A DNA stretch of 63,331 nt, counting the filler, from Guillardia theta CCMP2712 (Eukaryota; Protista; Cryptophyta), in the NCBI RefSeq assembly GCF_000315625.1. It is 3 parts of 3 records of this genome, joined end to end, with 100 filler letters (N's around TTAATTAATTAA, not from the genome) between each part and the next. Parts side by side here need not be neighbours in the genome. Positions count along the whole stretch, not along the records: positions 26,928 to 38,796 come from NW_005434293.1; 2 more parts are not named here. One strand, written 5' to 3'. Positions 26,930 through 36,431 of this stretch are shown here, piece after piece. A program made the position numbers and the translations under genes. The stretch's first letter is position 1; each line of letters begins with the position of its first letter. The notes under the pieces were generated by a model, which had not been told where the DNA came from, did no database searches, and worked only from the letters and a program-made list of their open reading frames with translations.

Positions 26930-28749
26930 TTCTTGCACTTTTCCCTTGGATCTCACCTGAATGGGGGCTCGTACTCGTTGCCGTAGCATGCGGCATAGAG
27001 CATGTTGCTGTAAGTGATCTTGTCCGGCTGCATCCGAAAAGGCGAAGGGGAGGAGAAAGTTAGAACAAGATGAGAGAAGAGAGAGAAAGTGGAGACAGAT
27101 GAAGGGCATAGAAGAGGAGAGAGGAAGAGGAGAGAAATGGAAGAGGAGAAGAGAGGAAAGAAACGAGGAGGAGAGGAGAGAAAGGAGGAAAGGAGGAAAT
27201 GGGAGAGAAAAGAGGAGGAGAGGATAAGGGAAGGAGAGGAGAGCAAAGAAGAGAGGGAAGAGAATAGAAGAGGAGAGGAGAGCATAGTACAGGGCAAGAG
27301 GGAGCAGGACACAACAGAGCAGGACAACGGACAACATCGAGAGGTTCTTACTTTCAACCCATCAGCCTTCAAGACATCGATGATACACATCGCTTGCTCC
27401 AACTTCCCTGCTCGAGATTATCAGCAAGCAAGCGAGAAATCATACTAACATCTCATTTGATTTGATCTGTGAACACAACAACAGCTGGTAGTGCATCAGA
27501 GCCTCACAAACACATCACGTCACGTCACGTCACGTCACGTCACGTCACGTCACGTCACGTCACGTCACGTCACGTCACACCACACCACATCACATCACAT
27601 CACATCACATCACATCACATCACATCACATCACATCACATCACATCACATCACATCACATCAAAAGAGAGCCATCTTTGTTGCAAACATTCTCTATCGTT
27701 GTCTTCACCTGCTTTCATCAAGATATGGATCATCTGATTATATGGGGCTGGGCTGCTCATCTTCTGACCAGAATGCCTCATAGTCTGCCACCAAACATGA
27801 TGAGAGTTCAAAATCATGTCTCCTCTTCCACTTTCCTCGTCGATGATAACAACAACATCATCATCATCACCACCGCCACCACCACCACCATCACCACCGT
27901 CCCCACCACCATCGCCATCATGATCATCCTCCTCCTCCTCATCATCATCACCATCACCATCACCATCACCATCACCATCACCACCATAATTGTCGCGTTC
28001 ACCTTGCCCTCACGATCTTCACTCACCTCAAATATTTCCATCGCCTTGTCGAGCAAACCGAGCCCTTTGCACGCATACAACACAGTTGTGTAACTGTGCT
28101 GATCTCTCTCCAAACCCTGCTCCCCCATCTTCTCAAACACACTAACAGTCGTCTTGAAGTCCTTCCTTCGATTCAGCGCAATCATCAGGTCGTTTACTCC
28201 TCGCATCGAGACCTTTCTCTTCTGAAAGAATGTCGTCCAGTCCAACTTGGGCCCACTAGAAATTTTCTCCATCCTCTCCTTCAGATGCTTCGGCCGTTTC
28301 TCATCCCTTGTTTTCCACTCCTGCTGCAGCAGCTGCTCCTTGGTAAAGACCCACGGGGGTACGTTTTCAAACCCTCTTATCCCTGCGCTCCTAAGCTTCT
28401 TCATCTCATCCAGTGTTACCTTCACCTCCTCCACCGCTCCTCCCTTCTTCTTCCTCATCGGCTTTTCTTGCGTCGACCCTCCAACCTCCTTCGCGAACTT
28501 CTGCATATCGCGCTCTGCTTCGCTGTTGTCCGCTAGACTGTTGACTGCAGGGTTGTTGTCTGCCATCCCCCGGGCAGGAGGCGACCAACCCTTCCGTGCC
28601 GTGGATGGGTGAGAGGCCAGAGGAGGAAGAACGAGCGTCCCCCTCCATGAGACTGAGAAGAAGCGAAGGGCGGAAGGCAGGCAGCACGTCCGAAACCTCT
28701 GCAAGGAGCTGCTGGCCGAGTACATCCCCACCCTCGTTGCCGCCTTCAT
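26930..28749 (-). CDS. Pentatricopeptide repeat (PPR) protein, probably organellar; 3' part runs into a gap
   Basis: PPR motifs: VNDLMIALNRRKDFKTTVSVFEKMGEQGLERDQHSYTTVLYACKGLGLLDKAMEIFE and LEQAMCIIDVLKADGLK|PDKITYSNML. The basic Ser/Arg-rich N-terminus resembles a mitochondrial presequence. Confidence 0.85.
27516..27661. repeat. Compound pentamer microsatellite (CACGT)n(CACAT)n, intronic
   Basis: Direct reading. Confidence 0.9.
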
Positions 28750-29019
28750 CTAGCGGCGAGCAGCAAGTCAGATATCCTGGTGAGCATATTTCTCAGTCCT
28801 CTCCATACTCCTTGACCTGCTCTAGCCATGGACCCACTGGACATTTTTAGCTCATCTGAGCCTCAAGCTCTGAAACCCCTCTACCCTATCATCCAGTCTC
28901 GACCCGTCAAATTCCTATTCCTCCCCTCCTTTTTCAATTGCCCCTGACCTCTCTGTTCTTCCTCCTGTTCTCCCTCTGCCTTCTCCCTCCACTGTCTCCT
29001 TTACCTCATCGCCTCTTTC

Positions 29020-29232
29020 TGCCCTGCCCTGCCCTGCCCTGCCCTGCTCTGCCCTGCCCTGCCCTGCCCTGCCCTGCCCTGCCCTGCCCTGCCCTGCCCT
29101 GCCCTGCCCTGCCCTGCCCTGCCCTGCCCTGCCCTGCCCTGCCCTGCCCTGCCCTGCCCTGCCCTGCCCTGCCCTGCCCTGCCCTGCCCTGCTCTTCTAT
29201 ACTCTGCTCTGCTCTTCTCTGCCCTGCCCTGC
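29020..29232. repeat. (GCCCT)n microsatellite
   Basis: Direct reading. Confidence 0.9.
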
Positions 29233-29824
29233 CGTCACTCCCTTGCTGGATCTGGACCAGTCGCAGGCGCACATGCAAGTACCACCCCTGTATAAAACTA
29301 CCCCTCAATACTGGGAAAAATCAGGGTTCTTCACTGTCGCCTGATAAAAGCAAATCCATTTACTTGGAAATATTGAAATATTAGAGTAGAGCTTGAAATA
29401 TTTTCGAAACTTATAACAATTTATTTTGATTCCGTTTCATTCAGTGACTGAACGTTTCAACGGTTTCAGGCCGCGGCTGCTCAGTGTCATGGAGGCCCGG
29501 CCCTAGCTAGTGGACCGGGCCCGGGCGTTGTTTGCCAACCTTGCTATCGACAGTCACGCGGCCAAAGAACAGCAGCAGAGCAGAATTTCCGACAGCCACA
29601 GAGCTGCCGCTTTCCGGAGTCCGGTGGCATCGCCGGGGGCCCGTGCCCGGCCGGGCCCGGGTATACTTGTAAGTAAAGTCTTGCCAGGCTCCGAGGCTCA
29701 CTCAGTGACATGTTGAGTAAGTTGAGAGAGTTGCTATGAATTGCTCAGCTCAAACGATTGCCTACAAATTCCCAGAGCGATTTTATACTGTTGATGCCTT
29801 TGAGTGACGCTTTAATTTTAACAC

Positions 29825-32800
29825 TCAATGACTGACAAACGTTCTTGAGAGAGAATCGCCGCCGGTCGCGACCATGAGCTCAGCTGGGACCCAGATAGAG
29901 AGCAGCTGGACCTGAAGGCCAGCAGGAAGTCACTGGGAGCCTTTGACGGTACTCTCCTGCGTTCCCAAGTAGCTCACTCGGAGCCTACGAGCCTAGTCGT
30001 GCCCCAGCACTTCTCCTGTCCTGTCCTGTCCTGTCCTGTCCTGTCCTGTCCTGTCCTTTTCTCATCTATTCTCAGCACTGAACTGAAGGCGTGAGTCCAT
30101 GCTTATCGCACTTTGGGGTGAAATTCGCTTTCCTCATCCCCTTCTTCCTTTTGTCCTATACTCTCAGCCCTGGCATTCTCCTCCTCCACCTCCTCCTCCT
30201 CCTCCTCCTCCTCTCTTGTACTCCTCCTCCCTTGTACTCCTCCCTTGTACTCCTCCCTTGTACTCCTCCCTTGTACTCCTCCCTTGTACTCCTAACTTCG
30301 CCCTGCTCCTCTCCTCCTCCCTCCTCCTGACCTGCTTCTCATCTCGCATCCTCCTGAATCTCACAGCCTCCTCATCCAGCAACGCATTTCCCTTGCAGCC
30401 TCTGTGGCATCGTGAGGAAGAGAACATCACTTGTAGCACCTGCCGATCAATCGCATCGAGCGATGGCTGGCTGTCTGACAAATGAAGGATAAGTTTGGAC
30501 TTGAGCTGCAGAAAAGGAGTGAAAAATACGTATCATGGTAAATGAAAAGAGAAGAGGAGAGGAGAGGAAGGAGAAGAAGAGATGGAGATAGGAAGCAGAT
30601 TCCCAAGAGGAGACAACGGGAGCAAAGAAAGCAGGAGCATGGAAACATAAGGGAGAGGAGGAGGAGGAGGAGGAGGAGGAGGAGGAGGAGGAGGAGGAGG
30701 AGGAGGAGGAGGAGGAGGAGGAGGAGGAGGAGGNNNNNNNNNNNNNNNNNNNNNNNNNNNNNNNNNNNNNNNNNNNNNNNNNNNNNNNNNNNNNNNNNNN
30801 NNNNNNNNNNNNNNNNNNNNNNNNNNNNNNNNNTCTCCTCGATGTATGCGCGACAAGAAGACACATTGAAAATGAAGTTGACGGAGGTGGGACTCATAGT
30901 AGATTCATTTGATAGAGATGACAAGTCCATGATGTGGCAAGCACCATACAGACCTGAGATAGCATGTGCAGTGACATCTCAGTCACCATCTCCTTCTTCT
31001 TGATTGTAGCAGCCATCGCTCTCTGGCAAGGTAGCTTTGAGTCTAGTATGGTTGGTGGAGTTTTGAGAGCAACTGAAGTCGGCATTGCACTGGTCCGATA
31101 GTTCAAGGTCCGATCCAAGCGAGGACTTTGGGAGAAGGGAGGGAGCCTCGTCGACCGATCGCAGCTCCTAGCTAAGCAAGGAATTCCAAAATTACTGATG
31201 CAACCTCGGGCCCCCCCCCTGGTCTACCCTTCAACCCCCCCATGTCTTCTCATTCTTCGCCTTAGTGCATATGGCATTCCATCTTGCCCGGACGAGCGGT
31301 CACACGGCTCCCCGGCCCACCCCTCCCCCCCCCACCCCACGAAGATCATAGCACCGGAATTATTAGACGTGGAGGAGGAGAAGGAGGAGGAAAAGGTAGA
31401 GTTTTTGGTGGTGGTGGAGCAGCAGCAGAAGCAGGTGGTGCAGGTGTAGATGTACGATGAGCAGGAGAATGTGCGGACAGAACCTGCTGCTCAAAACAGG
31501 AGAGGCAGTGATTGACCGCCTGTTACTGAGTCAGATGTTGGTGAGCCTGACATCGCCATTCGTCACCATCAACTCCCTTGTAGCCTGATCCACTTGCTCC
31601 CCTCGCTTTCTTCCCCCCCGCTCCTGCTCCTGCTCCTCCTCTTCGAACCTGCTCCAAGTTGGTCAAGATTGCTCTACCAGCAGCATCGACGTACCTGCCC
31701 CATGCTCTCCGTACCAAGACTCTCTTCTTGCCGCCATCCTCCCTGCTGTGTACACCTGCCCCGCTCCCTCCTTCCTCCTCCTCCTCTGCCTCGGCTGTGG
31801 ATCCTTCGGAAATGAGCAGCCCCCCCCACCCAAGAGGAGACGCGTCTGTGATGAGTATAGCTTCGATTTCAACCTCCTCATCCTGTTGGAGGAGGAGCTG
31901 GAGATTCGTCCATCCCATCCTCCATGCTCGTTGACAGCTAGAAAACTCCCTCCTGTCCTCTGGCGACTCCTTCCCCTGGCTTCCCTCCACCTCCACCTTT
32001 TGCCTGCACCTGATGGTGAAGGAAAATTCAGTCGCTCCTCTACCTCTCCTCGATCTCTGCTCTCTTTCTTTCTCCCCCCCTTCTCTTCCAACCTCCCTCC
32101 TTCTCGCTCTCTCCCCCTTTCTTGAACTTCTCCTTCCCTGCCTGCCTTGACCCCTCCCTCGTTCCTACCCTCCCTCTTTTCTCCATCTTTCTCAGTCTCT
32201 GTTTCTAACGTCTCCCTCCTTCTATCCTCTTTGTTGTTCTCTTCCTCCGCTTCTGCTCTCCTGCCGCTCTTCCCCCCTCCCACCCTTTGCGCACAGTCAC
32301 AACCGGCACACAGCAAGTCGCCACCTGGCAAGAAACTCGCGCACTTGCTGATCTCCCGCATTTGCAGAGCTGGCAAGTAGGCAGCAGAGTACGACGAAGG
32401 TCTGAACAACATTGCTCCACTCAAACACAACAAGATCGTCACACGAGAGCTGATGTTGAGATGTTCGCGAGTTGATGATTTTGTTGCTGCATCGACGTAC
32501 TCAAAGGAGTCCAAGTTAGCAAACAGGAGAGATCTCTTACATTATGGCAAGCGAGCTTGACAGCGGTGAAGTGTCCTTGTATGTGATGATACAAACTTCT
32601 TCCTCACAACGTGTATCAGGCGGATTATGAGACATCTCGGCAACAAGTAGCAGGAAAGCATGTCGGATGAGATTCAGAATGTTCAACAGACGATCTCTGT
32701 CTGTCATCCTCACCAGCTGCTTCTCATACTCTCTAATCACTGAGGCAAACCTCTCACCAACGTCCCTGCTTTGAGATTGCAGTATGCCAGCTCCCTTCTC

Positions 32801-33649
32801 CAAGACGCTCAGGGCCTTGAGAAAGGAAGAGCTTTCATCATGGCGGAGAAGCAAGCACAGCTGCAGAAGTTGCAATGAATGAGAAATGTGCTGCTATGAA
32901 GCAAAGAAACTGCACAGACCTTGACAAACGATGAAACCTTCAACTTCAGCTGGTCGTTCTCCTCTGCCATCTCCTCCAACTCTCTCCATCCCATCACTCC
33001 TTTCTTGACGCACAACCCGCATATCTCCATGACAAGAATCAACAACGTGCAAAGACAAGAGCACACAATCAGTTCAAAGTGTCTCGTCAACAACTTCCAT
33101 CTCAGTTTTCTTTACCTGTGTGAAAATGTACTTGGTCGCTTCATCTACCGTCTCTTCTCCATTCATCAATGATTTTGCTTCCTGGTACATGCCCAATCCT
33201 GAGTTTCTTCGCCTTTACATTTCAGTTTTCAACAGAAGCAAACTAGCACCATGCTGCTTGTTGTCAAGCAGCTTCTTCAACTTCCTGTGTTGGTGTCACC
33301 TCATCAAAAAATCTCTATCCCAAGGACCTCCGAAGTTGATGAGAATGTGCAAGACATACAACGATGCTGGCTTGCCTCTTGTCTTGTCTCCACGTACTCG
33401 ACGACTTCTTCGATCCAACACAAGGCGCTCCATGGCTGCTACCCACAACATTCACAACACATGGTCACATGATCGGTGGCAGTCGGACACAATCATTCAC
33501 ATTCTCCATGTCAAACATACACCATCGACGCATTCTCTGTCTCAAACAAACAAGTCTCACCGCGGAAGGAACGCACTGTCCACTGATGAGAACGGGGTCA
33601 CTCCTTGCACAAGGACGAAGAGAATCAGCAGTTTGAACACGTGCGCCAT
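29825..33649 (-). CDS. Intron-rich gene ending in a DIRS1-type RNase H domain, with a putative bipartite plastid presequence
   Basis: Spliced C-terminus: ILITDASPLGWGGLL...RAWGRYVDAAGRAILTNLEQ|ATRELM|AVNHCLSCFEQQ|LKSKLILHLSDSQPSLDAIDR|GCKGNALLDEEAVRFRRMRDEKQ|VQLLSIWVPAELMVATGGDSLSRTFVSH*. N-terminus MAHVFKLLILFVLVQGVTP-F. The RNase H call is firm; linking the 5' exons to it is inferred. Confidence 0.7.
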
Positions 33650-33914
33650 GGCGCTGATATCATCAGGGCACAAGGCAGAACGAAGGAGAAGGCAGCTGTG
33701 GGAAAATATATCAGTGCGTGCAGCATAAGACTAAAAGGGTAAAGACAGCTCTCTTTGAAGAGGTACATAAAGCAAAGGATTGCTTCTGACAGGATCAAAC
33801 ACAAGTTGACGAATAATACAAGAGGTATGAAAGGCACGCAAATCAAAGCCAAACAAAAGATGAAAGCAAGAGCAAGAAATTCTTCACAGAAGCAGGAACA
33901 GGAGAAGGAGCAGG

Positions 33915-34025
33915 GCCAGGACCAGGAACCAGGACCAGGACCAGGACCAGGACCAGGACCAGGACCAGGACCAGGACCAGGACCAGGACCAGGACCAGGA
34001 CCAGTACCAGGACCAGGACCAGGAG
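33915..34025. repeat. (CCAGGA)n microsatellite
   Basis: Direct reading. Confidence 0.9.
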
Positions 34026-35510: not shown

Positions 35511-36431
35511 CTACATGTACTCCTTCACGGTAGGAGAACGGGCTCGAGGGCCGTCTTGGGTCTTCCCTAGATCCTTCTTCACTGGCACGGGGCCAGAGGG
35601 GGGTGCAGCAGGAGGAACTTCCTTCTTGACCCTGAACGAACCGCCTCGCATTCTTGCCCCAGCATCGTTGAGCGCTGCCACCCAGTTGTCTCTCCTGCTC
35701 TCACTCTTGCAGAAGAAGTGGATACTCGAGTCGCAAGAATCCCTCGACGTGCCCTCCTCAGTGCTGAGGATGAACATTGTCGCGTGCTTCTCACTTGTCT
35801 TGATAACTGTGTCCCTCAATCTGAACATGCCAATTTCCCGCGTGAAGTCGTTCCCAGCAAAGATAGACATGATGCCCTTCTCGTTCACAACGCACAGGAC
35901 CTGCATACCCGACGTCGAGCTGGGACTCTCCCGGAGCTCTAGATGCCCTCGGATCTCATGCTGCCTAGTAGCGTCATGGTCTGCGGTGTGGAGGTTGGGA
36001 AGTGATCTAAAGGGTGCGCTGTCCTGTGCCCGAAGTGCCGCCTTTCGCTCCTGTATCTTCATGTCGACATTATTCCTTGGCGAAGTAGCAGGGGATAGTT
36101 TCGAGCTTCCAATCTCAGCTATTCTCTTGCTGTTACTCGGGTACGCAGCCTGGTGGCTTTCACCTCCTGCGATTTCAGGAAGGCACGAACGTTCGTCCTC
36201 AATAGCAAGCCTTGAGGGCCTGTCCGGGACAGCCTTCAGGAAAGGACGGTACCTCCGAGGAGAGGTATTGGGGGACTTGTATCCAAGGAACGTGTTTGAA
36301 TCATAATCCTCATGTCCATGAGGGCAGGGTCTTCGTTCGAGGTAGACATTTGGCCTAGTTTGGTCTGTGGCATGAAGCAGATGCCGAGAGAACAATGCTG
36401 GAGCAATACGCAGGAGGGAAAAGAGTATCAC
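35511..36431 (-). CDS. PH-domain protein
   Basis: IRGHLELRE...VLCVVNEKGIMSIF...EIGMFRLRDTVIK...FILST...IHFFCKSESRRDNWVAAL: PH beta-sandwich plus the C-terminal helix with the conserved Trp. The true start is uncertain. Confidence 0.7.
   Translation of the reverse strand: MILFSLLRIAPALFSRHLLHATDQTRPNVYLERRPCPHGHEDYDSNTFLGYKSPNTSPRRYRPFLKAVPDRPSRLAIEDERSCLPEIAGGESHQAAYPSNSKRIAEIGSSKLSPATSPRNNVDMKIQERKAALRAQDSAPFRSLPNLHTADHDATRQHEIRGHLELRESPSSTSGMQVLCVVNEKGIMSIFAGNDFTREIGMFRLRDTVIKTSEKHATMFILSTEEGTSRDSCDSSIHFFCKSESRRDNWVAALNDAGARMRGGSFRVKKEVPPAAPPSGPVPVKKDLGKTQDGPRARSPTVKEYM

What the first reader, a model, noticed from the sequence alone, without database searches (positions are those of the whole stretch)
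29825..31940. Domesticated DIRS-type retrotransposon RNase H split by spliceosomal introns, with catalytic DEDD intact
Seen: joining six minus-strand exons gives TDASPLGWGG...AWGRY...TRELMAVNHCLSCF...LKSKLILHLSDSQPSLDAIDRG...QLLSIWVPAELMVATGGDSLSR*. This follows the order and spacing of the DIRS1/Ngaro RNase HI consensus (TDASxxGWG, ELxAV, SDN, WxP..N..ADxLSR). All four acidic residues are present (~31845, ~31574, ~30474, ~29856). I found no YxDD RT motif, tyrosine recombinase or terminal repeats nearby. Inference: a mobile retroelement would tend to lose introns, so this is an old host-domesticated nuclease. The ORF track shows only fragments of it.
Basis: partly seen in the sequence, partly recalled or inferred. 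Interest (0 to 1): 0.8.

Follow-up and report, generated by a model that had tools for sequence, protein, structure and literature searches.

The report
Retroelement-derived RNase H gene in Guillardia
An expressed 13-exon nuclear gene of the cryptophyte alga Guillardia theta ends in an RNase H domain that came from a DIRS-like retrotransposon and keeps all four catalytic residues. It is a plausible but unproven case of a mobile-element enzyme taken over by its host.

Summary
The piece is the whole 11,869-nt scaffold JH993345.1 of Guillardia theta CCMP2712.

- **Splicing.** Eleven are GT-AG and one is GC-AG.
- **Product.** The spliced mRNA has one 517-codon ORF (ATG 33649, stop 29827-29825). 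The assembly gap lies inside intron 10, and the transcripts join its flanking exons in frame.
- **Annotation.** The public model GUITHDRAFT_149474 misses a 47-nt intron and stops early, so most of the domain is unannotated.
- **Homology.** A profile built here from 65 natural DIRS-like pol genes (RT-RNase H-methyltransferase, with a recombinase in one ORF scanned) matches residues 350-513 at 34.7 bits (E about 1e-12). Unspliced pieces and shuffles score 7.1 bits or less.
- **Active site.** D356, E431, D456 and D508 sit on the conserved catalytic columns.
- **Origin.** The domain fits DIRS-like profiles better than Ty3/caulimovirus-type ones.
- **Context.** The scaffold holds no RT, methyltransferase, recombinase or terminal repeats.

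Not shown: age, purifying selection or enzymatic activity. No orthologue or paralogue was found. The domain itself has diverged strongly.

The parts
29800..33700 (-). Transcription unit as covered by transcript contigs: 13 exons and 12 introns. The public model GUITHDRAFT_149474 covers only 31531-33649.
33561..33700 (-). Exon 1. 5' UTR, then ATG at 33649-33647. Residues 1-20 are hydrophobic and look like a signal peptide.
33328..33435 (-). Exon 2
33250..33284 (-). Exon 3 (absent from the public model)
33116..33198 (-). Exon 4
32920..33024 (-). Exon 5
32541..32860 (-). Exon 6 (106 codons, no recognisable family)
32325..32486 (-). Exon 7. Holds a second hydrophobic stretch, residues about 271-290 (32357-32416).
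31695..32009 (-). Exon 8. The RNase H homology starts here (about residue 334/350). Holds TDASPLGWGG with catalytic D356 (31846-31844), an acidic low-complexity insert and AWGR. The join to exon 7 is supported by run X1 only.
31567..31648 (-). Exon 9. Acidic insert and TRELM, with catalytic E431 (31575-31573).
31520..31566 (-). Intron 9 (47 nt, GT-AG). The public model reads through it and stops early.
31484..31519 (-). Exon 10 (AVNHCLSCFEQQ, rest of helix A)
30506..31483 (-). Intron 10 (GT-AG, phase 0). Contains the assembly gap 30734-30833 and a (GAG)n run, so its true length is unknown.
30444..30505 (-). Exon 11 (LKSKLILHLSDSQPSLDAIDR), with catalytic D456 (30475-30473)
30402..30443 (-). 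Intron 11, 42 nt, GC-AG. It is in frame and free of stops if retained.
30332..30401 (-). Exon 12 (GCKGNALLDEEAVRFRRMRDEKQ)
29800..29911 (-). Exon 13 (VQLLSIWVPAELMVATGGDSLSRTFVSH). Catalytic D508 (29857-29855), Met502 in place of the conserved Asn (29875-29873), stop TGA at 29827-29825, and 3' UTR to at least 29800.
29840..31864 (-). Genomic span of the RNase H domain (residues 350-513), spread over exons 8-13

Best explanation
This is a real, expressed, intron-rich nuclear gene of Guillardia theta, and the public annotation truncates it. Its 517-residue product has four parts: a hydrophobic, signal-like N-terminus; a Ser/Thr/Lys/Arg-rich stretch; about 300 residues with no recognisable relatives; and a C-terminal RNase H domain (residues 350-513). 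That domain descends from the pol gene of a DIRS-like tyrosine-recombinase retrotransposon. The RT, methyltransferase and recombinase modules and the terminal repeats are gone, so it cannot be mobile. Shown here: transcription, removal of 12 introns, one long ORF, profile-level homology, and retention of the four metal-binding carboxylates. Inferred: the domain still folds as RNase H. Its two acidic inserts fall in the beta2-beta3 turn and the beta3-helix A loop. It is also inferred to bind two divalent metals through D356/E431/D456/D508 and to cut, or at least bind, the RNA strand of RNA:DNA hybrids for the host. I put an exapted domain with some selected function at about 0.6. I put true catalytic activity at only about 0.35-0.4.
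For: Organism and scaffold. Splicing: 12 joints with GT-AG or GC-AG ends in transcript contigs from two studies, while a DNA-like contig of X9 is colinear with the genome. Coding: frame 0 of the spliced mRNA has only the terminal stop in 1605 nt, against 18 and 22 stops in the other frames. Homology: an HMM of 65-69 natural pol RNase H segments scores 34.1-34.7 bits, E about 1e-12, over residues 350-513. With the ascertained motif removed it scores 22.8-23.1 bits, E 3e-9. Controls score far lower: 2000 shuffles reach 7.1 bits at most, unspliced six-frame pieces 2.1 at most, and chance pattern matches are below 0. hhalign gives 95.3% probability, E 2e-8. The reference ORFs are RVT_1 + RT_RNaseH + Dam-like methyltransferase (+ Phage_integrase). 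Their profile hits solved Ty3, caulimovirus and cellular RNase H. A model of the closest reference (pLDDT 89) has the RNase H fold. Catalytic columns conserved in at least 90% of references align with D356, E431, D456 and D508. DIRS-like versus LTR-type: 17.5-43.3 bits against 12.1 bits with equal-sized profiles, and the domain falls inside the DIRS-like clade in a FastTree tree. No RT, MT, YR or long repeats are on the scaffold. Both annotated neighbours look like host genes: a PPR protein and a PH-like protein.
Against: No orthologue or paralogue was found, so selection cannot be measured and great age is not supported. The score of about 34 bits is far below that of real pol members (86 bits or more, median 167). 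The terminal branch is about four times the median, which fits relaxed constraint as well as a new function. The highly conserved Asn before the last Asp is Met, and the conserved Gly of the G-x-W strand aligns uncertainly. Expression in the one raw-read RNA run was very low: 5 reads in 6% of the run. The spliced peptide could not be given to Pfam or the structure tools, so its own fold is unverified. The reference set was ascertained by one motif and comes from unidentified metagenomic organisms.
Confidence: 0.6

Rival explanations
1. Neutral relic. A fragment of a DIRS-like pol landed in or next to a lineage-specific, fast-evolving gene and became exonised. It is transcribed and spliced, but the RNase H part has no selected function and is drifting.
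For: No relatives in 1.84 billion representative proteins. Very long branch and low profile score. Low-complexity acidic inserts in two loops, and an Asn-to-Met change. Low read depth in the raw RNA run.
Against: The 517-codon ORF is intact across 13 exons. All four catalytic residues, and 6 of the 8 other columns conserved in at least 85% of references, are kept although overall identity is about 24%. Five precisely spliced introns inside the domain all preserve the frame.
Confidence: 0.3
2. Part of an unusual, still mobile, intron-bearing DIRS-like element whose other modules lie off this short scaffold.
For: The scaffold is only 11.9 kb, rich in microsatellites and unplaced, as repeat-rich sequence often is.
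Against: A pol RT should lie directly upstream in the same reading direction. Instead, transcripts continue into 345 residues with no RT similarity (hhalign probability 1%). No MT or YR lies downstream before the PPR gene. There are no terminal repeats. DNA-like contig depth over the domain (2.6-4.7) is not above the flanks (6.4). No paralogous proteins were found.
Confidence: 0.04
3. The domain derives from a Ty3/gypsy-type or caulimovirus-type element, not a DIRS-like one. These also carry TDAS...ADxLSR, and some caulimovirus-like sequences have GWGA or YWGG.
For: The DIRS-like profile scores solved Ty3 and caulimovirus RNase H at 49-57 bits, higher than the G. theta domain. The caulimovirus-like contig L128 has TDASEEGWGAVL. 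Tree supports around the G. theta leaf are weak and the branch is long.
Against: An LTR-type profile (7 sequences) gives only 12.1 bits, almost all from the motif. Twelve DIRS-like profiles of 7 sequences give 17.5-43.3 bits. The best pairwise hits are DIRS-like ORFs L108 and L099 (E 2e-7 and 5e-7). No integrase is nearby.
Confidence: 0.1
4. Chance resemblance or assembly artefact: the motifs are coincidental, or they are joined across a mis-assembled gap.
For: Single exons give nothing in Pfam. Except for the motif exon, they also give nothing against the profile.
Against: The junctions were fixed by RNA, not chosen to fit. With them the motif-free part scores 23 bits, against 7.1 at most for 2000 shuffles. 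Transcripts from two studies span the gap in frame.
Confidence: 0.02

Closest known systems
RNase H domain of DIRS-like (tyrosine-recombinase) retrotransposon pol proteins. CDD calls it RNase_HI_RT_DIRS1, which PMC4495291 cites as characteristic of DIRS1-like elements.
   Same: Same order and spacing of TDASxxGWG, ELxAV, the (T/S)D strand and D-x-LSR, with the DEDD tetrad aligned. It fits DIRS-like profiles best, and its nearest single sequences are DIRS-like ORFs.
   Different: It stands alone, without RT, methyltransferase, recombinase or inverted repeats. It is interrupted by five spliceosomal introns. It carries two acidic loop inserts and has Met for the conserved Asn. It is far more divergent than any sampled pol member.
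LAP2alpha domain of mammalian TMPO and ZNF451, derived from the first ORF (GAG) of a DIRS1-like element (PMC4495291)
   Same: A piece of a DIRS-like element incorporated into a host protein, giving a chimeric product.
   Different: There the source is GAG, the domain is one large intronless exon, and it is conserved across mammals with dN/dS of 0.16-0.38. Here the source is RNase H, the domain is split over six exons, and no orthologues are known.
Ty3 and caulimovirus RT-associated RNase H (PDB 4ol8, 7q5b, 8r0s)
   Same: Same fold family and the same C-terminal N..AD.LSR signature. These are the closest solved relatives of the reference profile.
   Different: An LTR-type profile recognises only the first motif of the G. 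theta domain (12.1 bits).
Cellular type 1 RNase H (E. coli RNase HI, archaeal RNase HI, Mtb Rv2228c N-domain)
   Same: The model of the closest reference superposes on these with Foldseek probability 1.0 and TM 0.64-0.70. They share the same DEDD chemistry.
   Different: Sequence similarity is only marginal (E 1e-6 to 0.03 for the profile). The G. theta domain clearly belongs to the retroelement branch.

Membership tests
RNase H (type 1) fold superfamily | Significant profile homology to RNase H domains | tested here: met
   34.7 bits, E about 1e-12. 23.1 bits without the ascertained motif. hhalign 95.3%. The reference profile itself hits solved RNase H structures.
RNase H (type 1) fold superfamily | Four metal-binding carboxylates (D, E, D, D) in the conserved positions | tested here: met
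   D356, E431, D456 and D508 align with columns conserved in 90-100% of references.
RNase H (type 1) fold superfamily | Five-stranded mixed sheet with flanking helices in this protein itself | not testable with these tools
Only the closest reference (L108) was modelled (pLDDT 89.4) and matched RNase H structures. The inserts map to loops.
RNase H (type 1) fold superfamily | Cleavage of RNA in RNA:DNA hybrids | not testable with these tools
   Needs a biochemical assay.
DIRS-like pol RNase H subfamily | Closer to DIRS-like than to LTR- or caulimovirus-type RNase H | tested here: met
   17.5-43.3 bits against 12.1 bits with equal-sized profiles. Inside the DIRS-like clade, sister to L108, but with weak supports and a long branch.
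DIRS-like pol RNase H subfamily | Hit to CDD RNase_HI_RT_DIRS1 (cd09275) | not tested
   CDD is not among the libraries. Pfam has no DIRS-specific model, and the single exons hit nothing.
DIRS1-like retrotransposon (mobile element), as defined in PMC3266345: GAG, YR, pol = RT-RH-MT, ITRs and ICR | Reverse transcriptase directly upstream of the RNase H | tested here: not met
   The pol HMM and hhalign find no RT in residues 1-345 or in any frame of the scaffold.
DIRS1-like retrotransposon (mobile element), as defined in PMC3266345: GAG, YR, pol = RT-RH-MT, ITRs and ICR | Methyltransferase and tyrosine recombinase | tested here: not met
   The HMM of the post-RNase H region and the L034 recombinase give no hit better than E 0.06 and E 0.55.
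DIRS1-like retrotransposon (mobile element), as defined in PMC3266345: GAG, YR, pol = RT-RH-MT, ITRs and ICR | Inverted terminal repeats and internal complementary region | tested here: not met
   Only microsatellite-type repeats were found.
Domesticated (exapted) transposable-element gene | Immobile, with host-type exon-intron structure, and expressed | tested here: met
   12 spliced introns, transcripts in two studies, and no mobility modules.
Domesticated (exapted) transposable-element gene | Single or low copy | tested here: inconclusive
   No paralogous proteins, and no excess depth in DNA-like contigs. The genome itself could not be searched.
Domesticated (exapted) transposable-element gene | Orthologues in related species under purifying selection | tested here: inconclusive
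   The 323-aa model found no relatives in the protein libraries. The last 84 residues (434-517) could not be searched, and sampling of close relatives is unknown.

The most novel reading that the evidence does not exclude
The N-terminus looks like a cryptophyte bipartite targeting signal. It has a hydrophobic signal peptide, a Phe close to the likely cleavage site, and then a 55-residue stretch with 10 Ser/Thr, 12 Lys/Arg and only 3 acidic residues. If this is real, the alga has recruited a retrotransposon RNase H for its complex plastid or periplastidial compartment, for example to remove R-loops or primers there. That would be a mobile-element enzyme re-used for organelle genome maintenance.
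Probability: 0.1. Interest if true: 0.75.

Novelty: new member of a known kind. Interest (0 to 1): 0.5.

Why it matters
Host genes built from retroelement parts are well documented for gag, protease, integrase and envelope. For DIRS-like elements, the two full-text searches made here turned up only the mammalian GAG-derived LAP2alpha domain (PMC4495291). A DIRS-like RNase H that has acquired five introns, kept its active site and become the C-terminus of an expressed protein in a cryptophyte would extend this in two ways: to the nuclease module, and to a little-studied algal lineage. It also corrects a public gene model, since GUITHDRAFT_149474 is truncated and mis-spliced. Finally, it shows that such domains are invisible to ORF- or exon-wise searches and appear only after RNA-guided splicing. 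Without orthologues or an assay, its importance stays moderate.

Tried and rejected
- **Pfam on single exons or ORF pieces:** no RNase H hit.
- **ESM Atlas feature search of the motif-bearing piece:** only weak retroelement leads, score 0.90 or lower. The same search on the large N-terminal exon gave an inconsistent set of helical-repeat families with low recognition, so I did not use it.
- **Word-indexed searches with the 191-aa piece and with the 323-aa model:** only the model itself.
- **Exhaustive phmmer with the model:** itself plus one low-complexity hit.
- **Word-indexed search with the closest reference ORF (L108):** two unnamed metagenomic proteins and no Guillardia protein. This says nothing about whether G. 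theta carries DIRS elements.
- **An RT remnant around LSCDDLVVF (residues 260-268):** rejected; hhalign probability 1%, and the spacing to TDAS is wrong (about 95 residues against about 165).
- **An alternative unspliced reading (AILTNLEQ as the catalytic Glu motif):** rejected, because RNA removes that stretch as intron 8.
- **Spliced peptide in Pfam, PDB, Atlas and structure tools:** it has no contiguous reference, and I did not type it in. All tests on it were therefore done with local profiles.
- **Read laying row 5c (30325 to 31621) and the depth spikes at 30285-30421 and 31518-31654:** these are cross-matches of GAG-rich low complexity and were ignored.
Full report
**Where the piece comes from.** A word-indexed protein search with the motif-bearing ORF returned one protein at 99% identity. 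It is GUITHDRAFT_149474 of Guillardia theta CCMP2712, on a contig of 11,869 nt, which is exactly the length of the piece. The contig is JH993345.1 of GCA_000315625.1 and carries three gene models. They are a 265-aa ORF with a weak PH-domain hit, GUITHDRAFT_149474 (323 aa, window 33649 to 31531), and a PPR protein. All lie on the window's minus strand. The stretch from 31530 down to the PPR gene, which holds most of the proposed RNase H, is unannotated.

**Checking the observation.** Scanned one at a time, none of the pieces hits any Pfam family.

I laid public runs on 29600-33700. Contigs of two runs from different studies (X1 from 2014, X2 from 2019) skip twelve segments. After allowing for the reported cut offsets, all twelve begin GT (one GC) and end AG on the minus strand. 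The run kinds are only guessed as RNA. But contigs that precisely lack twelve introns must come from spliced RNA, whereas a 1.7-kb contig of run X9 is colinear with the genome.

Seven more lie upstream. The join of exon 7 to exon 8 was seen in X1 only.

**The assembly gap.** The N run 30734-30833 lies inside intron 10 (30506-31483). Both runs join 31484 to 30505, with GT..AG ends and phase 0. The coding sequence is therefore continuous and in frame across the gap. Only the intron's length is unknown. No DNA-like contig bridged it.

**The gene.** Concatenating the thirteen exons gives an mRNA of about 1.65 kb. Frame 0 is open from the 5' end to a TGA at 29827-29825. The first ATG is at 33649, which gives 517 residues. 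The other two frames carry 18 and 22 stops.

The public model differs in several places:
- it lacks exon 3;
- it lacks parts of exons 2, 6 and 7;
- it reads through the 47-nt intron 9, which ends it at ...TRELMVTNGDVRLTNI.

Nine introns are 42-125 nt long. The three long ones (315, 420 and about 978 nt) are full of microsatellites.

**Is the C-terminus an RNase H?** The spliced peptide cannot be referenced, and I did not type it in, so I built the test locally.

A degenerate DNA pattern for TDASxxGWGA was scanned over metagenome contigs and gave 120 loci. In most of them the motif sits in a long ORF, with YxDD about 165 residues upstream. In 36 of them [AG]DxLSR lies about 108 residues downstream. 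Six long ORFs scanned in Pfam carry RVT_1. Four of them also hit RT_RNaseH, two hit a Dam-like methyltransferase, and one hits Phage_integrase. This is the RT-RH-MT plus tyrosine recombinase make-up that defines DIRS1-like elements (PMC3266345).

Results against the spliced G. theta protein:

| Test | Result |
|---|---|
| HMM of 69 RNase H segments (65 after removing four chance pattern matches) | 34.1-34.7 bits, E about 1e-12, residues 350-513 |
| Same HMM with the TDASxxGWGA motif cut out, against the sequence after the motif | 22.8-23.1 bits, E 3e-9 |
| 2000 shuffles | 7.1 bits at most |
| Four chance pattern matches | -1.7 to -3.1 bits |
| Unspliced six-frame pieces of the scaffold | 2.1 bits at most |
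| hhalign | 95.3% probability, E 2e-8 |

The junctions came from RNA, not from fitting. The rise from nothing to 23 bits on splicing is therefore independent support for both the junctions and the homology.

**The active site.** Outside the ascertained motif, eight columns are conserved in at least 85% of references. The G. theta protein matches six of them: E431, A434, D456, D508, S511 and R512. Together with D356 this completes the D-E-D-D tetrad. The conserved Asn is Met502, and the Gly of the G-x-W strand aligns ambiguously.

Two acidic low-complexity inserts (residues about 367-394 and 406-428) fall in the beta2-beta3 turn and the beta3-helix A loop of the modelled closest reference.

A profile of 20 of these reference segments (alignment A1) is bona fide RNase H:
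- it hits the solved caulimovirus and Ty3 RT-RNase H at E 2e-14 to 6e-12, and cellular RNase HI more weakly;
- an AlphaFold model of reference L108 (pLDDT 89.4) matches archaeal, mycobacterial, retroviral and Ty3 RNase H structures with Foldseek probability 1.0.

**DIRS-like or LTR-type?** The TDAS...ADxLSR signature is shared with Ty3/gypsy and caulimoviruses, so I tested this separately. A scan of viral contigs for TDASxxGxGAVL gave seven usable LTR- or caulimovirus-like RNase H segments.

- Their HMM gives the G. theta protein 12.1 bits, nearly all from the first motif.
- Twelve DIRS-like HMMs built from seven random references give 17.5-43.3 bits.
- In a FastTree tree the domain falls inside the DIRS-like clade, next to L108 (support 0.69). 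Its terminal branch is 2.35 against a median of 0.58.
- The best pairwise hits are L108 and L099 (E 2e-7 and 5e-7).

This favours a DIRS-like source. The LTR-type sample is small and the long branch calls for caution, so I leave about 0.1 for an LTR- or caulimovirus-type origin.

**What is not there.** The pol HMM and hhalign find no reverse transcriptase in residues 1-345 or in any frame of the scaffold. The CDD in LSCDDLVVF is not an RT remnant. An HMM of the region that follows RNase H in the references (methyltransferase) and the recombinase of L034 also find nothing. Repeats are microsatellites only. Depth of DNA-like contigs over the domain is not above the flanks.

**Relatives.** phmmer of the 323-aa model against 1.84 billion representative proteins found only itself and a low-complexity hit. 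Two word-indexed searches found only itself. So there are no detectable paralogues or orthologues, with two caveats. The last 84 residues (434-517) could not be searched, and the genome itself is not searchable here. A search with the closest reference ORF found no Guillardia protein.

**Interpretation.** A retroelement RNase H, most likely DIRS-like, is split by genuine spliceosomal introns, has an intact DEDD tetrad, and sits in an expressed host-type gene without any mobility module.

The words 'old' and 'domesticated nuclease' go beyond the evidence. There is no orthologue, no selection estimate and no assay. The domain is much more divergent than any sampled pol member (34 bits against 86 or more). 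That fits either a new constraint or drift.

Against pure drift stand two facts: the intact 517-codon ORF across 13 exons, and retention concentrated on catalytic and core positions at about 24% overall identity. Part of that divergence may, however, predate the capture.

My estimates are:
- about 0.6 for an exapted domain with some selected role (catalysis about 0.35-0.4);
- about 0.3 for a neutral relic;
- a few per cent for a mobile element or for chance.

**Other features.** The N-terminus is hydrophobic (residues 1-20). It is followed by a hydroxylated, basic stretch poor in acidic residues, with Phe at positions 20 and 27. By my own knowledge of cryptophyte targeting signals, not tested here, this resembles a bipartite plastid or periplastid signal. 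A second hydrophobic stretch lies at about residues 271-290.

**Comparison with the known.** The closest documented DIRS domestication that two full-text searches turned up is the LAP2alpha domain of mammalian TMPO and ZNF451. It comes from the DIRS1-like GAG ORF, is encoded by one intronless exon, and is under purifying selection (PMC4495291). Neither search turned up a report of a DIRS RNase H recruited by a host, or of DIRS elements in Guillardia. Absence from that library is not proof. I therefore class this as a new member of a known kind (a host gene derived from a transposable-element domain), of moderate interest.

Noticed in passing
window 31531-33649 (-): The public model GUITHDRAFT_149474 (323 aa) disagrees with the transcripts in several places. 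It lacks exon 3 and parts of exons 2, 6 and 7. It also reads through intron 9, so it ends 84 residues short of the RNA-supported 517-aa product.
   Followed up: yes
window 33590-33649 and 33250-33589 (-): Residues 1-20 are strongly hydrophobic. Residues 21-75 have 10 Ser/Thr, 12 Lys/Arg and 3 Asp/Glu, with Phe at positions 20 and 27. This looks like a bipartite targeting signal, but no predictor was available.
   Followed up: partly
window 32357-32416 (-): A second hydrophobic stretch (about residues 271-290, NVVQTFVVLCCLLASSA) could be a membrane span between the unknown N-terminal part and the RNase H domain.
   Followed up: no
window 30402-30443 (-): Intron 11 is a 42-nt GC-AG intron. It is in frame and has no stop, so retaining it would add 14 residues inside the RNase H domain rather than truncate it.
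   Followed up: partly
window 27814-28749 (-): The PPR-repeat gene (annotated, 247-aa model) has an ORF that runs into a His/Met/Val-rich tail encoded by (CAT)n/(CATCAC)n microsatellites at 27856-27983.
   Followed up: no
window 35511-36431 (-): A 306-aa ORF (annotated as a 265-aa model) has a weak PH-domain hit, E 5e-4, below the Pfam cut-off.
   Followed up: no
window 27511-27662, 29019-29233, 30014-30057, 30224-30293, 30655-30733, 33893-34024: Microsatellites are unusually dense: (CACGT/CACAT)n, (CTGCC)43, (TCCTG)9, a 13-mer repeated 5.4 times, (GAG)26 abutting the assembly gap, and (CAGGAC)22. Several lie inside the long introns of the gene and probably explain the gap and the short scaffold.
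   Followed up: partly
L108:182-2167 (+), metagenome contig MDTA01118547.1: This is the closest natural relative of the G. theta domain. It is a 662-aa pol ORF that shares TDASPWGWGA, a D-S instead of D-N at the third catalytic strand, and IWIPSEL...DRLSR. Only one other protein (28% identity) resembles it in the word-indexed library, so this DIRS-like lineage is poorly sampled.
   Followed up: partly
L128 (IMGVR_UViG_638276714_000001, 8002 nt): A caulimovirus-sized viral contig whose pol has TDASEEGWGAVL. The GWG signature is therefore not exclusive to DIRS-like elements.
   Followed up: partly
L034:1062-4292 (-), marine metagenome contig: A single 1077-aa ORF combines RT, RNase H, a Dam-like methyltransferase and a tyrosine recombinase. 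All DIRS enzymatic modules are fused in one frame.
   Followed up: no
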